Positions 3,079 through 51,303 of a stretch of 64,000 nucleotides of DNA are shown piece after piece. The stretch spans positions 1-64,000 of the IMG/VR virus record IMGVR_UViG_3300025162_000016; one strand, 5' to 3'. The notes below the pieces were generated by a model. That model saw only the letters and a list, made by a program, of their open reading frames with translations. It did not search any database and was not told where the DNA came from. Positions within the stretch are counted from its first letter, which is position 1; every line of letters starts with the position of its first letter. A program made the position numbers and the translations under genes.

Positions 3079-4470
3079 ATGCATATCATTACACCGTATA
3101 ATCCGTGGGCTCCTAAAAAGAAAAAAACTTGGCAGGAAGAGTTGTGGGAACAGCAAACCATTGCGGAGGCTGAAGCAAGAATGTTAGCAGAAGCTAGTAG
3201 CAGGACATTACCCAATAATTCTCCTAATACTTCAATGGCAACGGTTGGACCAATGGCAAATACTATGGCAGGCGGTGGCGGTAAACCCGTTTATGCATTT
3301 TTTAGCGCCGGTTCAGACGTGGTAAATTTCGATCGGAGTCCTGCTAGTGGAGATGGCCCAGTCACGGTCAATTTTATAAATTTAACTACAACTCCTCAGT
3401 TCGATTCATATAAATGGAGATTTAGTGATAATACTACTAGTACGGATGTAAATCCGGTTCATATATTTCAAAGCGGAAGTACTAATTCAACCATTTATAT
3501 CGCATCGTTGGAAGTAAGTAATTCTGTAACCGGTGCGCCGGGTGGAAGAAGTCCAGATGTTTTTATTGTGGTAGGAGTTCCTAGTGTAACTGCCAGTTAT
3601 ACGTATACAACTACATCCAAGGTAGCGCCTTTCTCGGCGTCGTTTACTAATACTTCGATTAATACAAGTCAAACAAAAACGACTTCGTATGTTTGGATAA
3701 TCAAAAACGACAATAATACATACACGTCTACGGCGACCGATTTTGAGGTTAGAATTGATAGTGGAAGTGTTACCGCATCGCTCGGAATGACTGGATCGTA
3801 TGGATTAACTAGTTTGACTAATTCAATGTTTAAGGCGGCAGCACCCACATTATTAGTATCCTACACCGTGGTCACTTCGTCTAAATATGCTCCCGCTAAT
3901 GTAACGTTATCAAGTTCATATAGCTATACCGGAATCGGAACTCTTAGTGGACTCTGGCGTGAAGGAGAGTATCAGGAAAATGGCACGGAATATGTGGTTG
4001 GATATCCCGGTGCAAAAGTTATTGGGCCGGAAGTTTTCAATACGAAATCGATTTCGGGCGGTGATGGAAAATTCACCTCATCATTAGCAATTACTGAGTC
4101 TATATACGGAATTACCGCTTTCTATACTCAGAGTTTCCAGCTTAAATTGCCAACGTTGGAACTGTCATTCGTCACTCGTTCATTTGGTAACGGTGGAATA
4201 GAGAATTCTTATATGGAGCCGGTTTCAATGTCGTACACTTCGAGTATCGTTACGGAAGGTATGTATGGGGCGAATTACACATTCCTTTGGGATTTCGGTG
4301 CGGCAAGTTTCACAAACTCTCAAGGAGTTTATGCTGGGACTGCAACAACTCAAGGACCGCATTTCCGATCTGATTATGCTCCCGGTTCATACACGGCATC
4401 ACTGGAAGTTACATCGAGCATTTATGGATTGTCGGTGAGATCAACTCAAAGTTTCGTTGTCGGATCTTAA
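3079..4470 (+). CDS. PKD/Ig-like domain Ser/Thr-rich protein
   Basis: WRFSDNTTSTDVNPVHIF and FLWDFG PKD-like motifs. Confidence 0.6.
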   Translation: MHIITPYNPWAPKKKKTWQEELWEQQTIAEAEARMLAEASSRTLPNNSPNTSMATVGPMANTMAGGGGKPVYAFFSAGSDVVNFDRSPASGDGPVTVNFINLTTTPQFDSYKWRFSDNTTSTDVNPVHIFQSGSTNSTIYIASLEVSNSVTGAPGGRSPDVFIVVGVPSVTASYTYTTTSKVAPFSASFTNTSINTSQTKTTSYVWIIKNDNNTYTSTATDFEVRIDSGSVTASLGMTGSYGLTSLTNSMFKAAAPTLLVSYTVVTSSKYAPANVTLSSSYSYTGIGTLSGLWREGEYQENGTEYVVGYPGAKVIGPEVFNTKSISGGDGKFTSSLAITESIYGITAFYTQSFQLKLPTLELSFVTRSFGNGGIENSYMEPVSMSYTSSIVTEGMYGANYTFLWDFGAASFTNSQGVYAGTATTQGPHFRSDYAPGSYTASLEVTSSIYGLSVRSTQSFVVGS

Positions 4471-4499
4471 TTTAAACACTCATTATAAAATCAAAGACA

Positions 4500-4531
4500 A
4501 GGCGTTAGTAAAATAACGCCTTTTCTTTTTT
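4500..4531 (+). terminator. Rho-independent terminator
   Basis: AGGCGTTA/TAACGCCT stem followed by a T tract. Confidence 0.7.
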
Positions 4532-4552
4532 GTAACATAATCGTAACATAGA
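4531..4552 (+). promoter_or_regulatory. Pho-box-like direct repeat
   Basis: GTAACAT at 4532 and 4543 (11-bp period) upstream of the porin-pstS pair. Confidence 0.55.
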
Positions 4553-4601
4553 TTCATCAATTTCGTTTGCGGTTCTTCATAGTTATTTGCAAATTAAAAT
4601 T

Positions 4602-5288
4602 ATGATGAAAAATCTAAAAGTATATGTTTATGTCGCCGCCCTGATCATGGTCGGTGTTTTTAATGTTAATGCTCAAACTAATGTTGTATCAACGGGTTCC
4701 ACAAATAAACCTGTACATAAAACATTTAAAACCTTTGATTTGAGTAATTTCGTCTTTACAGTTGAAAACGAGTTCCGTGCTAAAGACACGGGCACCTCCT
4801 TCTTCTATGAACATAATGATATTCAAGCTAAATATCTTTTGATAGACAAATATTTTGATATCTTCACTGATTATCGACTTATTTTTAAAAACAGTGCCGA
4901 AGGTAATAATTGGAAAAATCAAAGTATGTTTCTTGAAGGCTTTAATATAAAATATCCCGAACAAACGTGGGGTAAAATTAACCTCCGTCAACGACTTGAA
5001 ATTGGACTGAACCATGCTCCTACAAAAGACACTTATCAGTGGAATGTGTTTCCCAAATATAATACCCCATGGAAACTTACTAAATATGAAATCAATCCAT
5101 TCGTAGCCGATGAATCCTTCTTTGACACCCAGCAATCTATGGGCTTTGTAAAAAATCGAGTCTATGCTGGTATAGATTATAAGTTTACTCCCAAAATCAA
5201 AGGTGGTACTTGGTACTACTATGAAACCGCTGCTCATTCATCATCAACCGCAAATGTCCTCGTTACCCAGATTAAATTCGAATTTTAA
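4602..5288 (+). CDS. Outer-membrane beta-barrel protein, DUF2490-like
   Basis: Signal peptide; RQRLE and NRVYAG motifs; C-terminal Phe (QIKFEF). Confidence 0.6.
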   Translation: MMKNLKVYVYVAALIMVGVFNVNAQTNVVSTGSTNKPVHKTFKTFDLSNFVFTVENEFRAKDTGTSFFYEHNDIQAKYLLIDKYFDIFTDYRLIFKNSAEGNNWKNQSMFLEGFNIKYPEQTWGKINLRQRLEIGLNHAPTKDTYQWNVFPKYNTPWKLTKYEINPFVADESFFDTQQSMGFVKNRVYAGIDYKFTPKIKGGTWYYYETAAHSSSTANVLVTQIKFEF

Positions 5289-5294
5289 ATTAAT

Positions 5295-6170
5295 ATGAAA
5301 TATCTTTTTATAAGTGCTATTCTCAGTCTGTTAATGGTAGGTTGTAATAAATCTAATAACATCGTGACAACCCCAACCACTACCATCCAAGTAAAAGGCT
5401 CAGATACAATGGTTAATCTGGCTCAAGCATGGGCAGAAGAATATGTAAAAACAAATCCTGCCATCAATGTGGAGGTTTGTGGCGGCGGGTCTGGTGTTGG
5501 TATTGCTGCCCTCGAAAAGGGAATCATTGATATAGCGAATAGTAGCCGTAATATGAAACCCGACGAAATTGATGCTACTAAAAAAATAACAGGTAAGTTA
5601 CCAGTGGAGTTCGTAGTCGGTTATGACGCTCTTGGTGTATATGTTCATATTGATAATCCCATTAATGAAATTACCATCGAACAACTCGCCCAAATCTATG
5701 TGGCAAATGGTAAAATTAATAAATGGTCGGATATTGGTATCAAAATTCCCAATGGAGAAGATAACATTGTCCTCGTCAATAGACAATCTAGTTCGGGAAC
5801 ATATGAGTTCTTCAGAGAACATGTTCTAAACAAAAAAGACTTCCGCCTCGGTTCGAGGGATATGAATGGTTCAAAAGAAGTGGTTGAATTAGTTTCATTT
5901 ACAAAAGCCGCTATCGGCTATAGTGGTATGGGGTATAATATACCGGGAAAAGTAAAAATGTTGAAAATAGCTAAAGCTGCCGGTATCCCATCCGTCGAAC
6001 CTACAATGATAAATGCATTAAATAAATCATACCCTCTATCTCGTTCACTATTATGTTATACTCTAGGAGAACCCGCTGGTGAACTGAAAAAATATCTTGA
6101 TTGGTGCGTATCTCCTCCCGGTCAAAAAATAGTAGAACAAACGGGATATGTTCCACTCCCAATTAAATGA
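5295..6170 (+). CDS. pstS: Phosphate ABC transporter substrate-binding lipoprotein
   Basis: KGSDTM, GGGSGVG, DIANSSR, RQSSSGTYEFF, YPLSR motifs; lipobox MVGC. Confidence 0.95.
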   Translation: MKYLFISAILSLLMVGCNKSNNIVTTPTTTIQVKGSDTMVNLAQAWAEEYVKTNPAINVEVCGGGSGVGIAALEKGIIDIANSSRNMKPDEIDATKKITGKLPVEFVVGYDALGVYVHIDNPINEITIEQLAQIYVANGKINKWSDIGIKIPNGEDNIVLVNRQSSSGTYEFFREHVLNKKDFRLGSRDMNGSKEVVELVSFTKAAIGYSGMGYNIPGKVKMLKIAKAAGIPSVEPTMINALNKSYPLSRSLLCYTLGEPAGELKKYLDWCVSPPGQKIVEQTGYVPLPIK

Positions 6171-6204
6171 GCGGCAATTATCATTTTGTTTCTATTTATT
6201 TTGA

Positions 6205-6410
6205 AGGAAGCAGAAAACCCATCTGCTTCCAGCGGATGGGATGAATGCGACCCATTGAAAAATAGTTTGATGTTTCTCATTTCTCAAAAATATATATTCT
6301 TGTAGAAAGCAATCTTCGGATTAGCATTCTCAAGGGCTGGAAGAGTCCTATAGAAACTCTAATGTTAGAGACAAGTGGAAACCCACTTGCTTTAGCGGGT
6401 GGGTACTTCA
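6205..6410 (+). mobile_element. Non-autonomous IS200/IS605 mini-element (left-end and right-end hairpins, no ORF)
   Basis: Left-end hairpin CCCATCTGCT/AGCGGATGGG plus ATGAAT (6218-6246); right-end hairpin ACCCACTTGCT/AGCGGGTGGGT plus ACTTCA (6381-6410); same layout as the two tnpB element ends; left boundary approximate. Confidence 0.65.
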
Positions 6411-6415
6411 TAAAT

Positions 6416-6790
6416 ATGATTAAACTAAAAGATATTTTGTTTGAGCTTATTGATAAGAATGCGATATTATATTTAGGATGGGTTAAACGCAATAACCATG
6501 ATGTTATGGGAATGGACATTCAGTCTGGGGAGGATGAGACGCATCATAATTATATGCTCGGATTGCCTCCGGAATGGAGAAATGAATTTGATAGTAATTT
6601 ATTGAGATGGAGATATCGAAAAGATATTAATATTGTCTATTGGTGGGAGTTTGGTAATCCAACCGATGACGAGAAAGAGGCGGTAGAACACTGGATTGAA
6701 AAAAAATTAAATCAAAAAAATCCTTCTCATAAAATTATTCCTACCGATAAAAATAATATGACTTTTTGGAAATCTCATGGAGAAGATTAA
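6416..6790 (+). CDS. Hypothetical protein with MIKLKDILFE N-terminal tag
   Basis: True start reassigned to ATG 6416; the upstream ORF extension lies within the mini-element. Confidence 0.7.
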   Translation: MIKLKDILFELIDKNAILYLGWVKRNNHDVMGMDIQSGEDETHHNYMLGLPPEWRNEFDSNLLRWRYRKDINIVYWWEFGNPTDDEKEAVEHWIEKKLNQKNPSHKIIPTDKNNMTFWKSHGED

Positions 6791-6808
6791 CAATGTCAAA
6801 TTTTGATG

Positions 6809-6836
6809 TTGACATTTATAGAAATTCTGCTATAGT
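6809..6836 (+). promoter_or_regulatory. sigma70-type promoter
   Basis: TTGACA(6809)-N16-TATAGT(6831) with TG extended -10. Confidence 0.7.
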
Positions 6837-6842
6837 AATTCC

Positions 6843-6971
6843 AGTTCTAATAAAATAAACAGTTGTGGGTTGACGAGTAGGTGGTGTCCACTGCGTCAAC
6901 ATTAAAACTGCAACCGAAGTGAAATTCTGTCAAAAAATCGCTTGTTTTAATATATTTTTCCGGTGAAGAAT
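6843..6971 (+). ncRNA. Candidate small structured RNA within the inverted repeat
   Basis: Follows the promoter; stem CAGTT..GTTGACG-AGT-GG[TGGTGT]CC-ACT-CGTCAAC..AACTG; no ORF; present in two copies. Confidence 0.4.
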
Positions 6972-7143
6972 ATTAATAAACATAGGTTAATTGACTAACA
7001 AAAAGATGAGAATAGAAATATTCCAGCACGGAGTTTATAGTCCCGAGTGTTTTAAAAACCTAAATTTAGCGAGAATAAATTTCAATAGAACAGGTAACTA
7101 TCTGTGGGTCAATATAGTGTTGACCATAAACAAAAAAAAATAT

Positions 7144-7422
7144 ATGAAAATTCAATCAATCATTTTAGCAGTTTTATTATCTACTAGCACTTTTGCTTTC
7201 GCACAAGATACACCTCAACCTCGCCGACAGGGACCGCCTCCCACCGTTCAATGTGAGGGAATGAAAAACTTAATGAAAGCAATGCAAGATCATAGAAAAA
7301 CATGTGAAGTCTGCAAGACCAATCCTCCTCCGAGAGGAATGTTTGGTCCACGAATGGGCGGTAAACAGGGTCAGGGTCAAGGTAGAGGTCAGGGTAGAGG
7401 TCCGCAGGGTCCGCCTTCTTGA
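7144..7422 (+). CDS. Small secreted protein, Gly/Gln/Pro-rich tail, CxxC
   Basis: Signal peptide MKIQSIILAVLLSTSTFAFA; the start could lie upstream (7006). Confidence 0.55.
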   Translation: MKIQSIILAVLLSTSTFAFAQDTPQPRRQGPPPTVQCEGMKNLMKAMQDHRKTCEVCKTNPPPRGMFGPRMGGKQGQGQGRGQGRGPQGPPS

Positions 7423-7499
7423 AAATAAGTTTTAATAGATATTTCGGGATCTGCTCAATTGACATGGGAGTATATTTGAATATTTTAACCTTCCTCCGA

Positions 7500-8709
7500 A
7501 AGAAATCCCTTTCCTTTAGGTGAGGGATGAATTTCGGAATATAATTAATAATTTTTTGATGTTTCGTATTTCTCAATCATATGTATAAGTAGAAAATGAA
7601 ATTTACTTATAAATATAGAATGTTTCCGACAAAAACCCAACAATCCATTCTAAATGGACAGTTGGAAACTTGTAGATTTCTTTATAATCATTTACTTGAA
7701 ATTAGGAAAAATGCATGGGAAAAAGAAAAAAAATCAATGTCCTGTTATGATACCCAAAATCTAATTCCTAAATTAAAAGAAGAATTTCCTCAACTCAAAT
7801 CTGTTTATTCACAAGTTCTCCAAAACGTAAATGTAAGAATTGATTTAGCATATCAAGGATTTTTTAGAAGATTGAAAAGTAATGAAAAATCTGGATATCC
7901 ACGCTTTAAAGGAAAAGGTAGATATAAATCCATTTGTTATTCACAATATGGAAATGGTTGTAAATTAGAAAAAAATAAATTATCTATTTCTAAAGTAGGA
8001 GATGTTTTCATTAAATTGCATAGACCAATTGAAGGTACACCGAAAACAGTTACTATAATAAAACAACCGACAGGTAAATGGTTCGTTTGTATTTCTTGTC
8101 AAGATGTTTCCAAAAAAATAAAGAATTTTCCCAAAACAAATAAAGAGTGTGGAATTGATGTTGGAATAACTTCGTTTGCTACTTTTGATAATGGTAATAA
8201 AATTGAAAATCCTCATTTTTTTGAAACCGAGGAAAAACAGTTATCAAAAGCACAAAATAAGGAAAAGTGGAAAGCGGTAAAAAGAATACATGAGAGGATT
8301 GGAAATAAGAGACATGAATTTCTTCATAAAATAACGAATGATATTCTTAAACAATATGATTTCATATCTATCGAAGATATTGATGTAAATTCTATTATAA
8401 GAAAAAGATGGAATAAGAAGCGGGTATATGATGTAGCGTGGAGTAATTTTGCAAACATACTTTCTCATAAAGCTGAAAATGCTGATAAGATTGTAGTAAA
8501 AATAAATCCGGCATATACTAGTCAGACATGTAGTGATTGCGGAACGAGAACAGTTATGGAAGAAAAGGATAGAATTTATAATTGTTCTTGTTGTGGGATG
8601 GTAAAAGATAGGGACGTGAATGCTGCAATAAACATTTTGAGATTGGGAACACAATCTCACGTTATTATATAACGAAGAAGCCCCTGCCTTTAGGCAGGGG
8701 AGTGTTCAC
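7500..8709 (+). mobile_element. IS200/IS605-family tnpB-only element
   Basis: Left-end hairpin ATCCCT..AGGGAT plus GAATT near 7505; right-end hairpin CCCCTGCCT/AGGCAGGGG (8681-8700) ending TTCAC at 8709. Confidence 0.8.
7596..8672 (+). CDS. tnpB: RNA-guided endonuclease TnpB (IS605 OrfB type)
   Basis: YKYRMFPT HTH; RuvC GIDVG, IEDI, DRDVNAA; CSDC/CSCC zinc finger. Confidence 0.92.
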   Translation: MKFTYKYRMFPTKTQQSILNGQLETCRFLYNHLLEIRKNAWEKEKKSMSCYDTQNLIPKLKEEFPQLKSVYSQVLQNVNVRIDLAYQGFFRRLKSNEKSGYPRFKGKGRYKSICYSQYGNGCKLEKNKLSISKVGDVFIKLHRPIEGTPKTVTIIKQPTGKWFVCISCQDVSKKIKNFPKTNKECGIDVGITSFATFDNGNKIENPHFFETEEKQLSKAQNKEKWKAVKRIHERIGNKRHEFLHKITNDILKQYDFISIEDIDVNSIIRKRWNKKRVYDVAWSNFANILSHKAENADKIVVKINPAYTSQTCSDCGTRTVMEEKDRIYNCSCCGMVKDRDVNAAINILRLGTQSHVII

Positions 8710-8724
8710 ATGCTATATATCATT

Positions 8725-9150
8725 ATGAAAAAGATATTCCATATACTTCTAGTCAGTTTAACCGTGTTTATATTAGCCGGTTGCACCACTGCTTTACAGT
8801 CAGATAAAATAATATCAATTAAAACTCGTTGTTTTGGGGTTATAATTGAAACCTCATCGATGTCTGCCAACAGTGTTCCAACAGTAAAGCTTGGATTCAT
8901 AAGTCAAGTAGTTCAATTAATTCCTACATCTACGAATGTTTTATATGCTCCAAATTATATGGACACTTTCGATCTAGGTCAGGGTATGAGTCCATTTAGC
9001 ACTACTATATCCGAAGATACCGGGACCGGTAATGTAATGTTAGATCCAGGTACCGCCACCATAATTACTACTAATAAAATGGGATTAGCTACCACTAATC
9101 ACGCTCCTTATAAATTAGGAGCAAGACTTCGCTCGCCTAAGCTGTTATAG
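8725..9150 (+). CDS. Lipoprotein of unknown function
   Basis: MKKIFHILLVSLTVFILAGC lipobox; stop codon lies inside the terminal CRISPR repeat. Confidence 0.65.
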   Translation: MKKIFHILLVSLTVFILAGCTTALQSDKIISIKTRCFGVIIETSSMSANSVPTVKLGFISQVVQLIPTSTNVLYAPNYMDTFDLGQGMSPFSTTISEDTGTGNVMLDPGTATIITTNKMGLATTNHAPYKLGARLRSPKLL

Positions 9151-9612
9151 TAACTGGTCTGTTCCAGCACTTCACCTACTGGTGCGGCGGTTGGGCATGC
9201 CGACAACAAGCGGAGGTGATATAGTAACTGGTCTGTTCCAGCACTTCACCCAAAGCAAGATTTTTATTCGCTAAAGAACAGTGTGGAGGTGATATAGTAA
9301 CTGGTCTGTTCCAGCACTTCACCCTAATATGGGCGGTCCCGCTGGGGTATCCTATGGGGTGATATAGTAACTGGTCTGTTCCAGCACTTCACCCTAATTG
9401 CATTTCCTTTTTCTCGGTATCGAACCTACGGTGATATAGTAACTGGTCTGTTCCAGCACTTCACCCATCTATGAAAGAACGCATAGTAATGAAGTTAGCG
9501 AAAGGTGATATAGTAACTGGTCTGTTCCAGCACTTCACCACGGCGTGCGCCATTTAAGGAATCCCTTAGTTTCGCCGGTGATATAGTAACTGGTCTGTTC
9601 CAGCACTTCACC
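9141..9612 (-). CRISPR. CRISPR array: 7 repeats of 36 bp, 6 spacers of 34-38 bp; no cas gene in window
   Basis: Repeat (minus strand) GGTGAAGTGCTGGAACAGACCAGTTACTATATCACC at 9141 (2 mismatches), 9215, 9288, 9358, 9430, 9504, 9577; spacers 38, 37, 34, 36, 38, 37 bp; degenerate repeat at left and promoter at right give minus orientation. Confidence 0.97.
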
Positions 9613-9668
9613 TGTGTCCCTCGTAACTATCGTATTATCAAAGAACTATGTATCAATTTGCGAGCGGT

Positions 9669-9697
9669 AGTGTATTCTATCGCCCTCGATTTGTCAA
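9669..9697 (-). promoter_or_regulatory. Array leader promoter
   Basis: Minus strand TTGACA-N17-TACACT; predicted +1 near 9662, about 50 nt before the first repeat. Confidence 0.8.
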
Positions 9698-9858
9698 CAT
9701 CAAATATCATATTTCGTAAGTTCCACATTATCAGCGAGTTACAAGTTGCGAGCGGCTATGGTATATTTGACACCACCTAACCGCTCGCAAATTAACATAA
9801 AAGTCTCATATGAGAAATCCAAAAATTGTAGACGTTTTATTTTAACCGGCATATATAT

Positions 9859-10320
9859 ATGCAGATGATTAAACTAAAAAAACTTATCGAGACCCGAGGT
9901 CTGGAAACGCAGAATGATTATTCTCGGCAAGAAAGCATTGAACTCACTGGACCTGAAGAAACCGATATTGATTATTATGACGATTTAAATAGAATGGAAA
10001 AAGAATCTGGAATTAATATTCTCAGTAACAAAGAATTGAATACTTTAGCGGTTCAAGACGAAAAGCTGGTCGGAGCCCTCTATGTTTCGATGCAGAATGA
10101 CGAATTTTCCTTTGATGTTATTGTCGATAAATTAGCTAGAGGACAAGGAATTGGAGCTAAACTTATTGATACCGCCCTTTCGCAATATCGAGAGATGAAA
10201 AATGATATGAGATTAACGTTGAAATTAGATGTGGTCAATCAATGGGTCGAAAAATATCTTCTAAAAAAAGGACTAAAAATTGTGGGAAAATACGGTACTC
10301 ATACAATAATGACAATTTAA
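9859..10320 (+). CDS. GNAT-family acetyltransferase with MIKLKKLIE tag
   Basis: VDKLARGQGIGAKLI acetyl-CoA binding motif; likely start 9865. Confidence 0.75.
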   Translation: MQMIKLKKLIETRGLETQNDYSRQESIELTGPEETDIDYYDDLNRMEKESGINILSNKELNTLAVQDEKLVGALYVSMQNDEFSFDVIVDKLARGQGIGAKLIDTALSQYREMKNDMRLTLKLDVVNQWVEKYLLKKGLKIVGKYGTHTIMTI

Positions 10321-10435
10321 TTTTTCTTGTTATTTGTAGTTGACAGAAACGACAATGTGTGTTATCAATAAAAAAAGTTTAATTGTTCCTCGTGGAACAT
10401 CTCCACGAGGAATCATATGATATATATTATAACAT

Positions 10436-10981
10436 ATGATTAGATTAAAAAATATAGTAAATGGAATATTAGCCGAGGAGGAAAAAAGTTCGGAGGATAC
10501 GGTTGCGAATAATAAAGGATATAATATAAAAAATATTTATCATGGTACAACCGAGAAATTTAATGTATTCAAGTTTGATACATTAAAAAATGTAAAAGCA
10601 TCCGATACAGATAAGGTTATATATGCTACAGATTCCGAGGAAGAAGCTAAAATCGCCGGTAGTCCTGATAGCAGTCGATCTAAGGTGATGAAATTATATG
10701 GGAAATTAAAAAATCCTATGGTGGTTGATGCTAAAGGTACAGAAAAAAATAAAAGTTTTGGAACAATTGGTTATAAAAAATTAATACAAATGGCTAAAAG
10801 TAGGAATCATGACGGTGCCATTATAAAAAATGTTATCGATTTTGGTAATACTCCACAGACGACATACATATTTTTTGATACAAAGGCAGTTAAACTCGCC
10901 GGAGAAACTAAAGATAATAGCGGCAATTTAATTCCTTTATCACAGCGATTTAATTCAACCGTAGATGATTTGCGGTTTTGA
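10436..10981 (+). CDS. ADP-ribosyltransferase-like protein (ART of polyvalent-protein type)
   Basis: IYHGT..FNVF, Y.T, LKNP and HDGAII motifs; paralogue of 30841..31380. Confidence 0.55.
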   Translation: MIRLKNIVNGILAEEEKSSEDTVANNKGYNIKNIYHGTTEKFNVFKFDTLKNVKASDTDKVIYATDSEEEAKIAGSPDSSRSKVMKLYGKLKNPMVVDAKGTEKNKSFGTIGYKKLIQMAKSRNHDGAIIKNVIDFGNTPQTTYIFFDTKAVKLAGETKDNSGNLIPLSQRFNSTVDDLRF

Positions 10982-10982
10982 A

Positions 10983-11010
10983 TTGACATTTAGGAAGAAT
11001 GTGATAGTCT
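10983..11010 (+). promoter_or_regulatory. sigma70-type promoter at the IS607 left junction
   Basis: TTGACA-N16-TAGTCT with TG extended -10. Confidence 0.6.
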
Positions 11011-11079
11011 ATTAAACATTTTAAGAGAAATATAGAAAAATATTGTAATTTGCGGAAAGTTGGTTATATTTATAACCAT

Positions 11080-11649
11080 ATGAAACTATCGAAATGGGCA
11101 AAATTGCAAGGAATAAGTTACAGAACAGCATGGTCTTGGTTTAAGAATAACACATTGCCTATTAAATCTTATCAAACTCCAACTGGAACTATTATAGTAG
11201 ATGACTCGTTGGATGTCAAAGAAAATAATAATGAAGTTGATATTTACTGTAGAGTTAGTTCCTCTAATAAAAAATTGGACTTAGACAATCAACTTAAATT
11301 ATGTGAAGAATATTGTATTTCTAATGGATACAAAATTAGAAAATCACTAAAAGAAATTGCATCGGGAATGAATGATAATCGACCAAGATTGAATTTAATT
11401 TTGGACAATCCATCAAATAAATTAGTAGTCCTTTATAAAGACAGATTAACAAGATTTGGATTTAATTATATAGAAAAACTATTAAAATCAAAAAAGTGTG
11501 AGTTGATAGTAATAAATCAAAACAAAACTGAGGAAGAGGACTTATTAAAAGACTTCATTGCTATTATTACATCGTTCTGTTGTAGAATGTATGGTGCGAG
11601 AAGAGGACAATCAAAAGCATTACGTATGAAACAGGAATTGAAAACATGA
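11080..11649 (+). CDS. tnpA: IS607 transposase (MerR-like HTH plus serine recombinase)
   Basis: MKLSKWAK..GISYRTAW HTH; YCRVSS; KDRLTRFGF. Confidence 0.93.
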   Translation: MKLSKWAKLQGISYRTAWSWFKNNTLPIKSYQTPTGTIIVDDSLDVKENNNEVDIYCRVSSSNKKLDLDNQLKLCEEYCISNGYKIRKSLKEIASGMNDNRPRLNLILDNPSNKLVVLYKDRLTRFGFNYIEKLLKSKKCELIVINQNKTEEEDLLKDFIAIITSFCCRMYGARRGQSKALRMKQELKT

Positions 11650-12890
11650 TTAGGAGTTCCAAACATTCTACAAAATTTACAAATCTTCGGAAAATGAAGA
11701 CATTGGCGTTGTTTATCTCGGAATATAGAAAAATAGGACAAGAAATTGTTGACATAATATGGAATAATGGATATGAAGAATTTAATATTCAGGAGGATAA
11801 ACTAAATTGTCCGAAATATCTCGATTATAAAAAATTCAACATAAATACATCCTTATCGGCTCGGGCATTAAGTTCTTTGGTTACACAGATATGTTTTAGT
11901 TTATCATCGGCAACAAAAAAACGAAAACAAATATTATATGCAAAGAATAAATTAATATCTGAAGGAAAGCCGCTTGGTAGAATTGATAAGATTCTCGATA
12001 AATATAAATTAATTAAACCAAATTTTTCAAACATCAATCCAGAATTGAGTTCAAAATGTTGCGATATTAAGGATGGAAATTCTTTTAATTATTTTTTAAG
12101 AATAAAATCAATAGGAAAAATATACGGATGTATTAAAATACCTATAAAAAATACAAAAGTATCATTAAAATGGTTAAAAAATGGAAAATTATTAAATTCA
12201 TTTTCTATTGGTCAGCAATATATTTCCCTACGATTTAATATTACAAATAAAAATGTAAATGTTGGAACTAAAATAATTGGAATTGATCAAGGACTGAAAG
12301 ATGTCGCAACATTATCAGACCATCAAATAACACCAAAATATGATATTCACGGGCATTCACTTGAATCAATTATAAATACGATATCAAAGAAGAAACGAGG
12401 TTCAGATGCATTTATTAAATCGCAGGAACATAGAAAAAATTTTATTAATTGGGCAATTAACCAATTAAATTTTAATGACGCCAAAGAAATTCGATTGGAA
12501 AAAATATGGAATATAGGATATAAACGGCGTACATCAAGAAGACTTTCACACTGGACGAATACGTTGATACGAGATAAGATTAAACGGAAATGCGAAGAGC
12601 TGGAGGTTCCAGTTATCGAGCAAGATTCCTCTTATCGCTCTCAACGATGTTCTTGTTGCGGATTAGTACGAAAGGCCAATAGAAATGGTAAAATATATAA
12701 ATGTAAAACTTGTAAATTTGAATCAGATGCTGATTATAATGCAAGTTTAAATCATATTGTAGATTTACCCGAAATCAGTTGGCAGTTTCGCAATCAACGA
12801 AATAATCTAAAATGTGGTTTTTACTGGAAGCCAAGTGGATTATTTAGTATTGATGGAGTGGAGCTTAGAGTCCCACTTTCTACCGATTAA
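11646..12890 (+). CDS. tnpB: IS607-associated TnpB nuclease, RuvC triad intact
   Basis: IGIDQG, IRLEKI, DADYNAS; CSCC/CKTC zinc finger. Confidence 0.88.
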   Translation: MIRSSKHSTKFTNLRKMKTLALFISEYRKIGQEIVDIIWNNGYEEFNIQEDKLNCPKYLDYKKFNINTSLSARALSSLVTQICFSLSSATKKRKQILYAKNKLISEGKPLGRIDKILDKYKLIKPNFSNINPELSSKCCDIKDGNSFNYFLRIKSIGKIYGCIKIPIKNTKVSLKWLKNGKLLNSFSIGQQYISLRFNITNKNVNVGTKIIGIDQGLKDVATLSDHQITPKYDIHGHSLESIINTISKKKRGSDAFIKSQEHRKNFINWAINQLNFNDAKEIRLEKIWNIGYKRRTSRRLSHWTNTLIRDKIKRKCEELEVPVIEQDSSYRSQRCSCCGLVRKANRNGKIYKCKTCKFESDADYNASLNHIVDLPEISWQFRNQRNNLKCGFYWKPSGLFSIDGVELRVPLSTD

Positions 12891-12986
12891 GATAATTTTC
12901 TATATTTTATCTAACTCTATTAAACAATGAATAAACTAACAGAAAAATCATGATATTAACAATAGTTAGACACCAACTATACACAT

Positions 12987-13022
12987 GGTGAAGTGCTGGA
13001 ACAGACCAGTCACTATATCACC
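12987..13022 (+). CRISPR. Solitary CRISPR repeat, inverted relative to the array
   Basis: GGTGAAGTGCTGGAACAGACCAGTCACTATATCACC; 35/36 identical to the array repeat. Confidence 0.95.
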
Positions 13023-13092
13023 AACGCATCCAGATTGTAAAAAAATGAGAGAATCGTTAGTAAACAAATAAACAAATAAAAAAATATAAATT

Positions 13093-13251
13093 ATGGGAAA
13101 TTCAAGAACAATAAAAAGAAGTATCGCCCGAAACCCAGAACGAGTATGGGTGGCTAAACAAACAGCAGCTAAACAAGAAGAAGATCGTCTTAATTCATTG
13201 AAGTCGAAGAATAACGTGGAATCTAAAGAAATATCCAAAGATTCTCTTTGA
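13093..13251 (+). CDS. Small basic hypothetical protein (52 aa)
   Basis: Open frame MGNSRTIKR..KDSL with AT-rich upstream region. Confidence 0.45.
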   Translation: MGNSRTIKRSIARNPERVWVAKQTAAKQEEDRLNSLKSKNNVESKEISKDSL

Positions 13252-13291
13252 TTTTTCAGAAAAATCAATATAGTTATACATGGTTAAAAGT

Positions 13292-13370
13292 GCGAACGTG
13301 GTACAGTGGCCGACTACGCCTTCTCTACACGGAGGAATCATCGCAGGTTCGAATCCTGCCGTTCGCACCA
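13292..13370 (+). tRNA. tRNA-Val(UAC) with atypical C33 and 7-nt variable region
   Basis: Acceptor GCGAACG/CGTTCGC-A-CCA; anticodon stem CCTTC/GGAGG, loop TCTACAC; T arm GCAGG-TTCGAAT-CCTGC. Confidence 0.8.
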
Positions 13371-13380
13371 GCTTAGTTGT

Positions 13381-13454
13381 CGGTTATAGGTGTTGCGGAA
13401 GCATACAAGTTTTGGGAACTTGTGGGGAGCGTTCAACTCGCTCATAGCCGACCA
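13381..13454 (+). tRNA. tRNA-Pro(UGG)
   Basis: CGGTTAT/ATAGCCG-A-CCA; CAAGT-TTTGGGA-ACTTG; GAGCG-TTCAACT-CGCTC. Confidence 0.9.
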
Positions 13455-13464
13455 AATTTTTGAT

Positions 13465-13535
13465 ATAGTTATCTTATAACGGTAATACGCTAGTTTTGCA
13501 GACTAGAAATCGGGGTTCGGCTCCACGGAATTTAA
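13465..13535 (+). pseudogene. Degenerate tRNA (anticodon TGC, Ala-like)
   Basis: Intact anticodon arm CTAGT-TTTGCAG-ACTAG and GGTTCG T loop, but no acceptor stem or CCA. Confidence 0.5.
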
Positions 13536-13537
13536 AT

Positions 13538-13609
13538 TGCAGTAAGGTGTAAGAGTGCATGTGACTCTCATAAGGTCACGGGCCGGTGCGAATCCGGAAT
13601 CTGCATCCA
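13538..13609 (+). tRNA. tRNA with CAU anticodon (Met or Ile2), partly mismatched stems
   Basis: TGACT-CTCATAA-GGTCA arm; TGCAG/CTGCA acceptor with 2 inner mismatches; T loop TGCGAAT; CCA end. Confidence 0.6.
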
Positions 13610-13655
13610 ATTTTGCTAAACAGCAAATATAAATAAAAAAATAGAAGTTAAAAAT

Positions 13656-14198
13656 ATGAAAAAAATGTTAAATTTGGTAGCGGTTATTGGACTTATTACA
13701 ATGTTGGGCACGGGTTGTTCTACTATTAAAACGTTGACACCGGCACAAGTGTCAATTGGAATTCAACAGACGGCTCAAATTGGTGCAACATATGCTATTC
13801 GACAAAATACCAACAATGTTAAATATTTTGTTTTAGCAGACGCAGCATTGAGTACATTTGTTTTAGGAACGGATCTGTCTCCCGCCTCATTTCAATCGGC
13901 ATTGGCAAATGTCGGATTACAGGATCAGTGGGCACAACTTGCGGTTAGTGCAGTCATTATTGCATATACCGCAACTTATAATCAATATGTCATAAATCAG
14001 GTCAATTCTAATGCGATGGCTAAAGAGTTTTTATTGGCGGTTGATAATGGATTTAAAGTAGCATTGGGAAAACCAGTTGTTCCGATGGTTCCCATTGCGC
14101 TAAAAGGCGAAAGAACGGGAGCAGTTCCTTACTTCCTTAAAGATGGGAAGATAGATAAGAATGCGATTTACACAAAAGTTTTAGTTACTAAAAGATAA
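13656..14198 (+). CDS. Lipoprotein of unknown function
   Basis: Lipobox LGTGC. Confidence 0.7.
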   Translation: MKKMLNLVAVIGLITMLGTGCSTIKTLTPAQVSIGIQQTAQIGATYAIRQNTNNVKYFVLADAALSTFVLGTDLSPASFQSALANVGLQDQWAQLAVSAVIIAYTATYNQYVINQVNSNAMAKEFLLAVDNGFKVALGKPVVPMVPIALKGERTGAVPYFLKDGKIDKNAIYTKVLVTKR

Positions 14199-14215
14199 TC
14201 TTTTCTTAATCTCAG

Positions 14216-14250
14216 ACCCCCGATCCGTCAAAAAGATCGGGGAGTTTTCA
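14216..14250 (+). terminator. Terminator-like hairpin
   Basis: CCCCGATC/GATCGGGG stem followed by T-rich sequence; boundaries approximate. Confidence 0.55.
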
Positions 14251-14292
14251 CTTCTTCGTTCTATTTATAAAGGAATACGGCGGTTTCATTTT

Positions 14293-14430
14293 ATGAAAAA
14301 ATTATTGAATATATTCTTTTTATTTCTATTTATAATTTTATTTGTTGGGTGTTTATCGGCGGGAAAAGGATTATCAAACACGGAGGTTGAATTGATGCGA
14401 GTCAATCCACATATACCAATCAATAATTAA
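14293..14430 (+). CDS. Small lipoprotein (45 aa)
   Basis: MKKLLNIFFLFLFIILFVGC lipobox. Confidence 0.5.
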   Translation: MKKLLNIFFLFLFIILFVGCLSAGKGLSNTEVELMRVNPHIPINN

Positions 14431-14443
14431 AATATAATATCAT

Positions 14444-14731
14444 ATGAACGCCGATTCCGTAATTGTTTATGCGAAATTATTTTGTATATTTGGTGGTACA
14501 AGTTTGTTATGTCTTCAAACTGGGCTTTCGCAATGGTCAAACGAGGCGGCAACGCCGTCTAAGGTTCAGTGGATAATGATTTTAGGAGGAAGTTTAGGAG
14601 CTGGATTAATGGCAACTGGCGGATTTTTATCTAATGATTATGGGAACTATAGAAAATCGCAGAATGACATTAATAGCAATAGAAGAATGTCTTTAGTTAT
14701 TCGGAAAAAAAGAGATATGGAAAAATCATAA
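14444..14731 (+). CDS. Small membrane protein (holin-like, two hydrophobic segments)
   Basis: Two hydrophobic stretches and a basic C-terminus; the holin role is inference. Confidence 0.45.
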   Translation: MNADSVIVYAKLFCIFGGTSLLCLQTGLSQWSNEAATPSKVQWIMILGGSLGAGLMATGGFLSNDYGNYRKSQNDINSNRRMSLVIRKKRDMEKS

Positions 14732-14772
14732 TAAGTTCATTGACTTTTCATTGGACATATGATATATATGTT

Positions 14773-14932
14773 AGAGTTAAGTGCGGACAGGTGATCCCCG
14801 CAATGATACGGGGCAGTCATAGATAATAATGTAAGTTGTTAAGTTCAACCGAAGACTATGATAGGAGTCGTCACCGTAATAATAATGGCGGCTTTGATGA
14901 TGAGACAAGATTTTCATCTTACACTTAACTTT
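14773..14932 (+). ncRNA. Unclassified structured RNA of about 160 nt
   Basis: Closing stem AGTTAAGTG(14775)/CACTTAACT(14922); internal CCCCG/CGGGG, GTCATAG/CTATGAT, GTTG/CAAC and GATGA/TCATC stems; TTGACT promoter at 14740. Confidence 0.55.
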
Positions 14933-14936
14933 TTGT

Positions 14937-15022
14937 GGATAGTAAACTGTGACGGCTCACAGGATAGTCTTGAAAACTATAATGCCGAGAGGCATCTGGA
15001 TCGACACCAGTACTATCCTCCA
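14937..15022 (+). tRNA. tRNA-Ser(UGA) with non-canonical 8/4 acceptor/T-stem architecture
   Basis: 8-bp GGATAGTA/TACTATCC; 6-bp D stem CTGTGA/TCACAG; ATAGT-CTTGAAA-ACTAT; long V arm ATGCC-GAGA-GGCAT; 4-bp T stem CTGG/CCAG; T-CCA end. Confidence 0.85.
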
Positions 15023-51004: not shown

Positions 51005-51303
51005 AATCCGGTTATTTATATATTGTTATAAATCCTGCCTTTCCGTTATGGTGCAAAATAGGCATCACTACCAATCTTAAAGAACGAATTTATTTGTACC
51101 AAACTTGTGATCCCCACCGAGGATACAAACTGGTGTATTCCCTTTATCATCCGGATTACAAAGAAGCTGAGAAAAAAATAAAAAAAGCTATAAAACCATT
51201 CGCAAAATCAATTAAAAACGAATGGGCCGAAATTGATTTGGAAATGTGTAAAAGTCGCCTTCAAGAGTCGCTCGAATCCTATCAATCTGGCGAGTGGATG
51301 TGA
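51001..51303 (+). CDS. T5orf172-like (GIY-YIG superfamily) protein; stop codon supplied by the IS end
   Basis: GYLYIV..KIGITTNLKER..Q..DP; AE..I; NEW. Confidence 0.65.
   Translation: MKSGYLYIVINPAFPLWCKIGITTNLKERIYLYQTCDPHRGYKLVYSLYHPDYKEAEKKIKKAIKPFAKSIKNEWAEIDLEMCKSRLQESLESYQSGEWM

What the first reader, a model, noticed from the sequence alone, without database searches (positions are those of the whole stretch)
10983..13022. IS607 TnpB inserted between a promoter and a solitary CRISPR repeat: possible nascent TnpB-CRISPR system or RNA anti-CRISPR
Seen: a promoter (10983-11010) abuts the left junction. Removing the element via the 11-bp direct repeat (11008/12916) leaves promoter, about 65-nt leader and repeat, the same layout as the main array. 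The leader-proximal sequence resembles the array leader (ATAGTTA...ACACA before GGTGAAG). The single mismatch converts a G-U pair to G-C, preserving the hairpin in crRNA sense. An intact tnpB now lies on the same strand 96 nt upstream of the repeat. Established: Cas12 effectors arose repeatedly from TnpB associating with arrays, and phage solitary repeats can act as RNA anti-CRISPRs. Inference: a snapshot of TnpB-CRISPR coupling in a phage, or a promoter-driven decoy repeat.
Basis: partly seen in the sequence, partly recalled or inferred. Interest (0 to 1): 0.8.

Follow-up and report, generated by a model that had tools for sequence, protein, structure and literature searches.

The report
IS607 transposon beside a lone CRISPR repeat
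An intact jumping gene (IS607, with its TnpB nuclease) sits 67 bases upstream of one of many lone CRISPR repeats in a 360-kb phage that has its own Cas12-like system; the two look like independent neighbours, not a new TnpB-CRISPR hybrid, although this kind of transposon end turns up next to such repeats oddly often in this phage lineage.

Summary
The sequence facts are largely confirmed. An intact IS607-family element (tnpA 11080-11649, tnpB 11646-12890) is bounded by an 11-bp direct repeat and 36-nt terminal inverted repeats. It lies between a plausible promoter (10983-11010) and a solitary CRISPR repeat (12987-13022). That repeat differs from the array repeat by one hairpin-preserving change (G·U to G-C). 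The claimed leader resemblance is not significant.

The functional reading is mostly not supported:
- The TnpB guide-RNA scaffold ends at the IS right end (~12919), 67 nt before the repeat.
- There is no anti-repeat.
- None of 13 homologous TnpB loci has this repeat or any array.
- The element is a mobile IS.
- The repeat belongs to the phage's own Cas12-like/Cas3 system (four arrays, at least 10 solitary repeats on the 369-kb contig).
- No genome in the 185,579-species genome collection carries the repeat, so a decoy against a host system is unlikely.
- No IS-free allele exists in any sampled population; all are 100% identical.

One oddity remains. IS607-type right ends, including a promoter-bearing gene-less ωRNA-like element, lie directly upstream of three canonical solitary repeats. 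In a related phage an IS607 follows a single repeat where a sister contig has an array.

The parts
10983..11010 (+). Promoter-like site TTGACA-N16-(TG)aTAGTCT just after the stop of the ART-PolyVal gene. Its last 3 nt overlap the left direct repeat.
   Evidence: Sequence. Not listed by the consensus scan. Shares the TTGACATTT form with other promoter-like sites in this phage. Function is inferred.
11008..12926 (+). IS607-family insertion sequence. It spans 1919 bp including both 11-bp direct repeats (1908 bp counting one). The crossover point is ambiguous within the repeat.
   Evidence: 11-bp direct repeat. Terminal inverted repeats at 11028-11063 / 12872-12907, 28/36, p~0.0005. Homology to the paralogue ends at 12919.
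11080..11649 (+). tnpA, serine-recombinase transposase, 189 aa. The catalytic Ser lies in the YCRVSS motif. Overlaps tnpB by ATGA.
   Evidence: NCBIfam transpos_IS607 equivalog 178.9 bits against a cutoff of 110. Pfam Resolvase 1.6e-17. Start and motif verified.
11646..12890 (+). tnpB, RNA-guided nuclease family, 414 aa, apparently intact (GIDQG, RLEK, DADYNAS, two CxxC).
   Evidence: Pfam Cas12f1-like_TNB 4.8e-15. guided_TnpB 2e-22. PDB TnpB/Cas12f-type chains E 5e-16 with catalytic positions aligned. Motifs located.
12780..12919 (+). Predicted omega-RNA (right-end RNA) scaffold. It has the conserved box GGAGCTTAGAGTCCC (12860-12874), a terminal hairpin, and the end motif CTAACTCTA.
   Evidence: Box, variable hairpin and AACTST terminus are shared by homologues, whose flanks are unrelated beyond the terminus. 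Consensus fold has 6 of 21 pairs with compensatory changes. Covariance model R1. No Rfam family hit.
12920..12939 (+). Predicted TnpB guide (TTAAACAATGAATAAACTAA): the first 20 nt outside the right end. It is part of the 67-nt segment 12920-12986 separating the IS from the repeat.
   Evidence: Inferred from the position of the scaffold end and from established TnpB/IS607 biology (PMC8612924, PMC11061315).
12987..13022 (+). Solitary CRISPR repeat (C25 variant), full hairpin retained, no partial repeat within 100 nt.
13023..13058 (+). Sequence in the spacer position after the solitary repeat ('pseudo-spacer', AACGCATCCAGATTGTAAAAAAATG...). No target found and no terminator predicted.
   Evidence: No match at <=5 mismatches in ~110 kb of the same genome. 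No other exact 20-22-mer hit in the viral or genome collections. Terminator scan.
9141..9732 (-). Nearby CRISPR array: 7 repeats, spacers of 34-38 nt, terminal degenerate repeat at 9141-9176. Its conserved leader carries the promoter TTGACA-N17-TACACT (9669-9697).
6806..7101 (+). Copy of a ~297-333-nt gene-less repeated element. It has its own promoter (TTGACA-N16-TATAGT), an omega-RNA-like box (CGGAGTTTATAGTCCCG) and the terminus GGTAACTAT. Elsewhere on the contig, two rearranged copies abut solitary CRISPR repeats.
   Evidence: All five copies are the best non-training hits of model R1 (26.7 to 18.7 bits, E 0.015-0.9).

Best explanation
Two separate things sit side by side.

(1) An intact, probably active IS607-family insertion sequence.
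- Its serine recombinase TnpA moves it.
- Its TnpB nuclease is loaded with an RNA made from the 3' end of tnpB plus the right end of the element. That scaffold stops at about 12919.
- The roughly 20 nt just outside the element (12920-12939) serve as the guide. TnpB would then cut copies of the phage genome that lack the insertion and so favour retention of the IS. This is the usual selfish TnpB mechanism.

(2) A solitary CRISPR repeat 67 nt further on.
- It is one of at least ten single repeats, plus four arrays, that belong to the phage's own CRISPR system. That system is a 1003-aa Cas12j-like effector paired with Cas3, about 70 kb away on the circular map.
- Before the IS arrived, the repeat most likely formed a small promoter-driven unit: promoter, about 68 nt, then the repeat.
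- Because Cas12j-type effectors need only an upstream repeat, such a unit can yield one crRNA-like RNA with a fixed 'spacer'.

The IS landed between promoter and repeat. The repeat is now probably transcribed as the tail of the tnpA-tnpB transcript.

Basis of each step:
- Shown: the anatomy, the boundaries, the scaffold conservation, the repeat's membership in the phage's system, and the lack of linkage in TnpB relatives.
- Inferred: transcription, TnpB activity, processing of the solitary repeat by the Cas12-like protein, and any role of the resulting RNA.
For: IS anatomy:
- tnpA passes the IS607 equivalog cutoff.
- tnpB has intact RuvC and zinc-ribbon motifs.
- The 36-nt terminal inverted repeats have their symmetry axis in the middle of the 11-bp direct repeat.

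Right end and guide:
- Homology to the 67% paralogue stops at 12919.
- Eight homologues share box, hairpin and AACTST terminus, then have unrelated flanks.
- The consensus fold shows covariation.
- Guide placement follows from established TnpB/IS607 work (PMC8612924; PMC11061315).

Independence of the repeat from the IS:
- No repeat lies downstream of any of 13 homologous loci, and none has any array.
- There is no anti-repeat.

The repeat belongs to the phage's own system:
- Identical repeats form arrays next to Cas3 and the Cas12-like gene.
- Relatives of that effector carry homologous repeats with compensatory stem changes.
- Hairpin pairing is kept across array, terminal and solitary variants.
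- Other solitary repeats have their own sigma-70-like promoters at 6-49 nt.
Against: - No RNA data, so transcription and processing are unproven.
- No IS-free allele was found: all alleles from several samples are 100% identical. The pre-insertion state is a reconstruction.
- The pseudo-spacer has no identifiable target.
- 'Independent neighbours' does not explain why IS607-type right ends lie directly upstream of, and co-oriented with, three canonical solitary repeats. A rough estimate gives P about 4e-6 for 3 of 7 right ends, or about 4e-4 for 2 of 6 if the two MITE cases count as one event. These estimates were made after the pattern was seen and rest on an approximate repeat census.
- It also does not explain why an IS607 follows a single repeat in relative L042.
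Confidence: 0.55

Rival explanations
1. Non-random targeting. IS607-type elements of this lineage, and their gene-less derivatives, preferentially integrate or home next to CRISPR repeats. The cause could be TnpA target preference or a TnpB guide that matches the repeat. On this view the adjacency reflects transposon biology with no shared function.
For: - Two rearranged copies of the omega-RNA-like element end 2 nt before a complete repeat, so the guide position is the repeat itself.
- The window IS ends 67 nt before a repeat on the same strand.
- In relative L042 an IS607 follows repeat 1.
- Rough association estimates are 4e-6 to 4e-4.
- The L042 right end and the element share the terminus GTAACTAT.
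Against: - Three other copies of the element, the TnpB-416 paralogue and TnpB-366 are not next to repeats.
- The two exact adjacencies are sister copies sharing diagnostic bases, so they may be a single event.
- IS elements also accumulate in non-essential regions, and arrays are such regions.
- The geometry differs among cases: 2 nt upstream, 67 nt upstream, and downstream of the repeat.
Confidence: 0.17
2. Scar of array breakage. The solitary repeat is the surviving (terminal) repeat of an array that was truncated by an IS-associated rearrangement, and it has no function of its own.
For: - L042 and L043 are 99.98% identical up to the exact end of repeat 1. L043 then continues as an array, while L042 continues into an IS607 with no further repeat.
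- The C25 variant of the window repeat is also the variant found in the terminal repeats of two arrays.
Against: - No degenerate repeat or leader traces flank the window repeat or lie left of the IS.
- The clean 11-bp direct repeat suggests a simple insertion without adjacent deletion.
- The hairpin is fully intact, and even strengthened.
- Solitary variants elsewhere show compensatory changes and have their own promoters.
Confidence: 0.12
3. Nascent TnpB-CRISPR coupling. TnpB-414, or TnpB together with the Cas12-like effector, uses a chimeric transcript in which the omega-RNA is followed by a CRISPR repeat. This would be a snapshot of a transposon nuclease acquiring CRISPR-type guides.
For: - Same strand, intact tnpB 96 nt upstream, and probable co-transcription.
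- The literature allows array capture by insertion of a transposon near an existing array (PMC10691335).
- Right ends recur upstream of repeats.
Against: - The scaffold ends at the right end, 67 nt before the repeat.
- No anti-repeat.
- No conserved association in relatives.
- The element is still mobile.
- The repeat is already served by another effector in the genome.
- The repeat shows no significant similarity to the omega-RNA 3' end.
Confidence: 0.08
4. RNA anti-CRISPR (Racr-like decoy). The solitary repeat RNA soaks up a Cas protein of the host or of a competing phage.
For: It meets the formal solitary-repeat-unit features: intergenic, truly solitary, hairpin intact, and a promoter nearby (definition in PMC10651486).
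Against: - The phage itself encodes the cognate effector and four arrays, so a decoy would titrate its own system.
- The repeat core has 0 hits in 185,579 species genomes.
- At least 10 solitary copies with varied flanks look more like guide-type units than a single decoy gene.
Confidence: 0.08

Closest known systems
IS607-family insertion sequences with TnpB and right-end guide RNA (omega-RNA/reRNA); PMC8612924, PMC11061315
   Same: - Serine-recombinase TnpA immediately upstream of, and overlapping, tnpB.
- TnpB with a RuvC triad and zinc ribbon.
- Structured RNA spanning the tnpB 3' end and the right end, with the guide just outside the element.
- Terminal inverted repeats.
   Different: - TnpB is divergent: it falls below the NCBIfam IS607_TnpB and guided_TnpB cutoffs.
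- The RNA is not the RAGATH-18 type, with no Rfam hit.
- The element resides in a huge phage.
- It has 11 bp of identity at both junctions.
- The TAM is unknown.
Viral solitary repeat units / RNA anti-CRISPRs (Racr), PMC10651486
   Same: A single CRISPR repeat in an intergenic region of a phage, close to a promoter, with the hairpin preserved and no partial repeat nearby.
   Different: - The phage encodes the matching cas genes and arrays itself.
- No host genome with this repeat was found.
- There are many copies per genome.
- An IS now separates it from the promoter.
crRNA-like regulatory RNAs (CreA, crlRNA; bioRxiv 10.1101/2024.12.27.630466)
   Same: A lone repeat followed by a fixed spacer-like sequence, which could load the resident effector.
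   Different: - No partially matching target was found for the pseudo-spacer.
- The described cases are mainly type I systems in bacteria, not a phage type V system.
TnpB lineages that acquired CRISPR arrays (type V-U candidates; PMC10691335)
   Same: A TnpB-family gene with a CRISPR repeat downstream on the same strand. That paper considers insertion near an existing array as one possible route.
   Different: - The association is not conserved in the clade.
- The repeat belongs to another type V system.
- The gene is still part of a mobile IS with TnpA.
Cas12j (CasPhi)-type systems of huge phages (PMC7162821; PDB 8xcc/8wru/8zqb)
   Same: - A phage-encoded single effector whose RuvC region matches Cas12j19/Cas12X (E 3e-7).
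- 36-nt repeats, spacers of about 36 nt, and no adaptation genes seen nearby.
   Different: - The effector is about 1000 aa and only its C-terminal part is recognisably similar.
- It is always paired divergently with a Cas3-like HD-helicase in this phage and in all three relative effector loci fetched (four contigs).
- Many solitary repeats accompany the arrays.

Membership tests
IS607-family insertion sequence | Serine-recombinase transposase TnpA of the IS607 type | tested here: met
   NF033518 transpos_IS607 equivalog, 178.9 bits against a cutoff of 110. Pfam Resolvase. YCRVSS motif.
IS607-family insertion sequence | Accessory tnpB directly downstream, with RuvC D/E/D and a zinc ribbon | tested here: met
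   Pfam TNB domain 55.9 bits against a cutoff of 26.3. PDB alignment. Motifs located. Family-specific NCBIfam models fall below cutoff.
IS607-family insertion sequence | Defined ends shared between copies, and evidence of mobility | tested here: met
   Terminal inverted repeats, p~0.0005. A paralogue shares the right end up to 12919 and then diverges. The 11-bp junction identity has p~0.005. The occupied state is fixed in all samples, so current activity is unknown.
TnpB omega-RNA (right-end guide RNA) | Conserved structured RNA overlapping the tnpB 3' end and stopping at the element boundary, followed by a variable guide | tested here: met
   Expression and binding cannot be tested here.
RAGATH-18-derived reRNA of IS607 TnpB | Match to the RAGATH-18 RNA family | tested here: not met
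   The Rfam scan of 8000-15000 at E<=1 found only tRNAs.
CRISPR-associated TnpB / nascent type V effector | Association with CRISPR conserved across at least two clusters of the clade (PMC10691335) | tested here: not met
   None of the homologous loci in other contigs, nor the 67% paralogue, has this repeat or any array within 4 kb.
CRISPR-associated TnpB / nascent type V effector | The array is not attributable to another CRISPR-Cas system | tested here: not met
   The same repeat forms arrays beside Cas3 and a 1003-aa Cas12-like gene on the same contig. The source criterion excludes arrays linked to non-type-V systems; I extended it here to another type V effector.
CRISPR-associated TnpB / nascent type V effector | Guide RNA that incorporates or pairs with the repeat (repeat at the scaffold end, or an anti-repeat) | tested here: not met
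   The scaffold ends 67 nt upstream. Duplex energy is no better than for shuffles, and the longest complement is 7 nt. The repeat versus the omega-RNA end is not significant.
Solitary repeat unit (SRU) | Full-length repeat match, intergenic, no partial repeat within 100 bp | tested here: met
   35/36 identity. Best flanking identity is 17/36, within the null range.
RNA anti-CRISPR (Racr) | Not associated with cas genes, and mimics the repeat of a host CRISPR-Cas system | tested here: not met
   The phage encodes the cognate cas genes and arrays. There are 0 hits to the repeat core in 185,579 species genomes. An unsampled host cannot be excluded.
RNA anti-CRISPR (Racr) | Expressed small RNA that binds Cas proteins and inhibits interference | not testable with these tools
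   Needs RNA-seq and interference assays.
Single-spacer mini-array / crRNA-like guide for the phage's Cas12-like effector | Repeat with conserved crRNA hairpin, upstream promoter, and a downstream sequence with an identifiable target | tested here: inconclusive
   The hairpin is conserved, with covariation. The promoter is plausible. No target was found.

The most novel reading that the evidence does not exclude
In this lineage of huge phages, IS607-type right ends and their omega-RNA-like, promoter-bearing derivatives have become functionally joined to the repeats of a Cas12-like/Cas3 system. Two versions are possible:
- A TnpB guide RNA whose guide position is the CRISPR repeat itself (as in the two copies that end 2 nt before a repeat) directs TnpB to CRISPR repeats. 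That would mean array-directed homing or array sabotage.
- Chimeric omega-RNA-repeat transcripts feed both nucleases, a living intermediate between transposon guides and CRISPR guides.
Probability: 0.1. Interest if true: 0.8.

Novelty: new member of a known kind. Interest (0 to 1): 0.45.

Why it matters
On the best-supported reading this is an ordinary transposon insertion next to a phage solitary repeat. It is useful mainly as a well-delimited IS607/TnpB element, with a predicted guide and scaffold, in a huge phage.

The context is more interesting than the locus:
- The phage has its own Cas12-like/Cas3 pair, four arrays and at least ten promoter-equipped solitary repeats. For a type V effector that needs only an upstream repeat, such single repeats could be minimal fixed-guide genes. 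That role differs from the decoy role shown for Racrs.
- If the recurrent placement of IS607-type ends beside these repeats proves to be targeted, it would bear directly on how TnpB elements and CRISPR arrays come together. The literature leaves open whether that happens by omega-RNA duplication or by insertion near existing arrays.

Tried and rejected
Searches for relatives and an empty site:
- Megablast of 7000-15000 against GenBank phages gave no match.
- A gapped exact pattern for the empty site in metagenomes gave 0 hits.
- Relatives of the flanking ART gene in viral and metagenome collections returned only the same phage.
- An exact-protein look-up found 24 contigs. All 8 shown carry the IS, and all are 100% identical. 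No natural variation is available.

Sequence resemblances I suspected by eye and rejected after shuffling tests:
- solitary-repeat upstream vs array leader (p 0.04-0.11);
- solitary-repeat upstream vs the MITE end (0.45);
- leader vs MITE (0.40);
- repeat vs MITE end (0.16);
- repeat vs IS607 omega-RNA (0.33).

Other ideas tested and dropped:
- That the CRISPR repeat is the 3' end of the TnpB-414 omega-RNA. Rejected because the paralogue and homologues end at AACTST and lack the repeat.
- That the 94-nt module upstream of two solitary repeats belongs to the neighbouring TnpB-391 element. Rejected because that element ends about 14 nt after its stop codon.
- That the array-adjacent TnpB-358 is fused to the array. 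Rejected because its element ends at 8711, 430 nt away, with an ORF between.
- Degenerate array remnants around the solitary repeat: none found.
- Targets for the pseudo-spacer: none found.
- Rfam families in the region: only tRNAs.
Full report
**What is in the sequence.**
The window is the first 64 kb of a 368,758-bp viral contig (IMGVR_UViG_3300025162_000016), and window and contig coordinates coincide. The contig's last 3 kb or more are identical to window 4027-7102, so the genome is circular or terminally redundant.

At 9141-9612 there is a CRISPR array of seven 36-bp repeats, with spacers of 34-38 nt. It reads on the minus strand from a conserved leader with a TTGACA-N17-TACACT promoter. 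A single further copy of the repeat lies at 12987-13022 on the plus strand. It is therefore inverted relative to the array and has one mismatch, T25 to C.

Between the array and the single repeat lie:
- a GNAT acetyltransferase gene;
- an ART-PolyVal gene;
- the element in question, made of a serine-recombinase gene (11080-11649) and a 414-aa TnpB gene (11646-12890).

- The 11-bp direct repeat TCTATTAAACA is present at 11008-11018 and 12916-12926. A match this long between the two junction windows has a chance of about 0.005.
- I also found a 36-nt imperfect terminal inverted repeat (11028-11063 versus 12872-12907, 28/36, p about 0.0005). Its symmetry axis falls at 11013/11014, the centre of the direct repeat. 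This is what a serine-recombinase crossover site flanked by transposase-binding arms should look like, so the element is well delimited.
- TnpA passes the curated IS607 equivalog cutoff.
- TnpB aligns to solved TnpB/Cas12f-type proteins with the three RuvC acidic residues and both CxxC pairs in place.
- The single mismatch in the solitary repeat changes G9.U25 to G9-C25 in the same predicted hairpin, -13 to -15 kcal/mol.
- The promoter is only a consensus match. It has a perfect -35 box, a TG, and a 3/6 -10 box, and the scan tool did not list it. It does share the extended TTGACATTT form with several other promoter-like sites of this phage.
- The claimed resemblance to the array leader does not survive a shuffling test (p 0.04-0.11), and the best match is a different segment from the one cited. 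The four real arrays share a near-identical 100-nt leader that the solitary repeat lacks.

**Where the TnpB guide RNA ends.**
A 67%-identical paralogue of the TnpB gene lies elsewhere on the contig, and eleven more distant homologues lie on other viral contigs. The paralogue stays homologous through ...TTATCTAACTCTA and diverges right after window 12919.

Across eight homologues the same architecture recurs:
- a conserved box GGAGYTTASAGTCCC near the end of the ORF;
- a hairpin of variable sequence;
- a terminal AACTST motif, after which the flanks are unrelated.

A consensus fold of six of them has 6 of 21 pairs with compensatory changes. By the established logic of TnpB and IS607 elements, the guide is the variable sequence just 3' of the conserved scaffold (PMC8612924; PMC11061315). 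The predicted guide here is therefore 12920-12939. The CRISPR repeat starts 67 nt beyond the scaffold. Rfam recognises no family here, so this is not the RAGATH-18 type of IS607 RNA.

**Is the repeat linked to this TnpB?**
- None of the 13 homologous loci has this repeat within 4 kb, and none outside this phage has any CRISPR-like array.
- The IS, its RNA region and the 67-nt segment contain nothing that pairs with the repeat better than shuffled controls. The longest exact complement is 7 nt.
- The element keeps its transposase and ends, so it is a mobile IS and not a domesticated gene.

These are the criteria used in the literature to call a TnpB lineage CRISPR-associated (PMC10691335), and they are not met.

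**Whose repeat is it?**
The same 36-bp repeat forms three more arrays on the contig (14, 7 and 12 repeats) and occurs as single copies at ten or more further places. The 14-repeat array follows a Cas3 gene with HD and helicase domains (cas3_core, 9e-30). Divergent from Cas3 is a 1003-aa gene whose C-terminal RuvC region matches Cas12j19/Cas12X structures at E = 3e-7.

Homologues of this protein at 45-58% identity exist. In all three relative effector loci fetched (four contigs) the gene is again paired divergently with a Cas3-like helicase. Their repeats are homologous 36-mers with compensatory stem changes, CTGG/CCAG to CTTAG/CTAAG to GCCTG/CAGGC.

So the repeat belongs to a phage-borne type V-like system with a conserved crRNA hairpin. 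The variants within this phage also keep the hairpin: G1-C36 to A1-U36, U3-A34 to C3-G34, and G9.U25 to G9-C25, with 92% of cells paired.

The C25 form of the window's solitary repeat is the form also seen in the terminal repeats of two arrays and in several solitary copies. It therefore looks like an old variant and not a recent copy of the neighbouring array.

**What the solitary repeat probably does.**
It is truly solitary: no partial repeat lies within 100 nt. Other solitary copies on the contig have good sigma-70-type promoters 6 to 49 nt upstream. From my own knowledge of Cas12j/CasPhi, which was not tested here, such effectors process their own pre-crRNA and need only the repeat upstream of the guide. 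A promoter plus one repeat is then a sufficient gene for one fixed guide.

I looked for a target of the sequence after the repeat. None turned up in the ~110 kb of this genome I could read (up to 5 mismatches in 22). Apart from this locus itself on the two contigs of the same phage, no exact 20-22-mer match turned up in the viral or genome collections.

The decoy (Racr) reading fits the formal definition of a solitary repeat unit (PMC10651486). It is weakened in two ways: the phage encodes the cognate effector, and the repeat core is absent from 185,579 species genomes.

**No empty site.**
- An exact gapped pattern for the unoccupied site found nothing in metagenomes.
- Relatives of the flanking ART gene were only the same phage.
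- The exact ART protein occurs on 24 contigs from JGI, ENA and Logan samples. All eight shown have TnpA and TnpB after it, and all are 100% identical in DNA.

The insertion is fixed in a clonal population, and the pre-insertion state remains a reconstruction.

**What remains odd.**
The phage carries at least six TnpB genes. It also carries a gene-less repeated element of about 297-333 nt with these features:
- its own TTGACA-N16-TATAGT promoter;
- a box CGGAGYTTATAGTCCCG;
- the terminus GGTAACTAT;
- flanks that differ between copies.

A covariance model built from the TnpB-414-family 3' regions finds all five copies as its best non-training hits. They align end to end, but the scores are weak (26.7 to 18.7 bits, E 0.015 to 0.9). 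The IS607 of relative L042 ends in the same GTAACTAT. I therefore regard the element as a probable omega-RNA-like derivative of this IS607 lineage.

Two rearranged copies end 2 nt before a complete CRISPR repeat, so the position where a guide would sit is the repeat itself. These two copies share diagnostic bases and may represent one event.

Together with the window's IS, that makes three canonical solitary repeats with an IS607-type right end directly upstream on the same strand. A rough estimate gives 4e-6 for three of seven right ends, or 4e-4 for two of six. I made these estimates after seeing the pattern, and the repeat census is incomplete.

In the relative, contigs L042 and L043 are 99.98% identical through Cas3, the leader and repeat 1. 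They part exactly at the end of repeat 1. L043 goes on as an array. L042 goes into an IS607 (TnpA 43% identical to ours, TnpB in fragments) with no more repeats. This suggests either that these elements favour repeat-adjacent sites or that they break arrays down to single repeats. In the window itself I found no remnants of a former array.

**Verdict.**
The most likely explanation is an ordinary, intact IS607 insertion between a promoter and one of many solitary repeats of the phage's own Cas12-like/Cas3 system. Each nuclease would have its own RNA (confidence about 0.55). Targeted insertion near repeats, array breakage, true coupling and a decoy role are ranked below it. They are not all mutually exclusive with it. 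The locus itself is a new example of known kinds. The wider pattern deserves a whole-genome census and RNA data.

Noticed in passing
window 6806-7101 (+). Also L033 (minus strand, contig ~237.1 kb), L035 (minus strand, contig ~361.6 kb), L016:1397-1539 and L022:5426-5588.: A ~297-333-nt gene-less repeated element. It has its own TTGACA-N16-TATAGT promoter, an omega-RNA-like box and the terminus GGTAACTAT, and each copy has different flanks. The two rearranged copies end 2 nt before a complete solitary CRISPR repeat. It is probably a non-autonomous derivative of an IS607/TnpB element that could supply guide RNAs in trans.
   Followed up: partly
L004:189-3200 (+) and L006:2038-4206 (-) (contig ~298.5-303.9 kb). 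Relatives: L042, L043, L044, L045.: A 1003-aa Cas12j-like protein is divergently paired with a Cas3-like HD-helicase in this phage and in all three relative effector loci fetched (four contigs; effector 49-58% identical). The 36-nt repeats are homologous and their stems covary. A conserved Cas12-like plus Cas3 pair is not a standard type V layout, and I found no description of it.
   Followed up: partly
L004:3426-14077 (contig ~304.1-314.8 kb): Seven or more single repeats on one strand are dispersed over 11 kb of small genes downstream of the Cas12-like gene. Most have the compensated variant AGTGA...TCACT. Several have strong sigma-70-type promoters 6-49 nt upstream, and some are followed by a duplicated CTATATCAC motif.
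   Followed up: no
L042 (reverse complement 5834-7800) versus L043 (reverse complement 6633-6926): Two contigs encoding the identical effector are 99.98% identical up to the exact 3' end of repeat 1. One continues as an array. The other continues into an IS607-type element (TnpA intact, TnpB in fragments) with no further repeat.
   Followed up: partly
window 7584-8711 (+) and 51298-52424 (-): Two copies (74% DNA identity) of an IS200/IS605-type TnpB-only element, with TnpB of 358 and 366 aa. The first ends 430 nt from the array's terminal repeat. More TnpB genes flank other arrays: TnpB-398 at L031:13706-14902 right after the 14-repeat array, and TnpB-391 at L008:1613-2788 before two arrays.
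   Followed up: partly
contig end (L035:8725-11800) = window 4027-7102: The end of the contig repeats the start of the window exactly over at least 3 kb (probably ~7.1 kb). This indicates a circular or terminally redundant genome of about 361.6 kb.
   Followed up: partly
window 9613-9860 (minus-strand leader); also the L042/L043 leader: The array leader carries three copies of a CCGCTCGCAA / TTGCGAGCGG motif around the promoter. The same motif recurs in the leader of the relative's array, so it may be a conserved protein-binding site.
   Followed up: no
window 13012-13041 (-): Read on the opposite strand, the repeat contains TGATATAGT, an extended -10-like box. At the solitary repeat it sits 18 nt from a TTTACA, giving a promoter-like site that points back toward the IS right end, antisense to the omega-RNA.
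   Followed up: no
window 13093-13609 (+): The solitary repeat is followed by a 52-aa ORF and a cluster of tRNA-Val(TAC), tRNA-Pro(TGG) and tRNA-Met(CAT). The promoter at 10983 may originally have served this whole unit.
   Followed up: no
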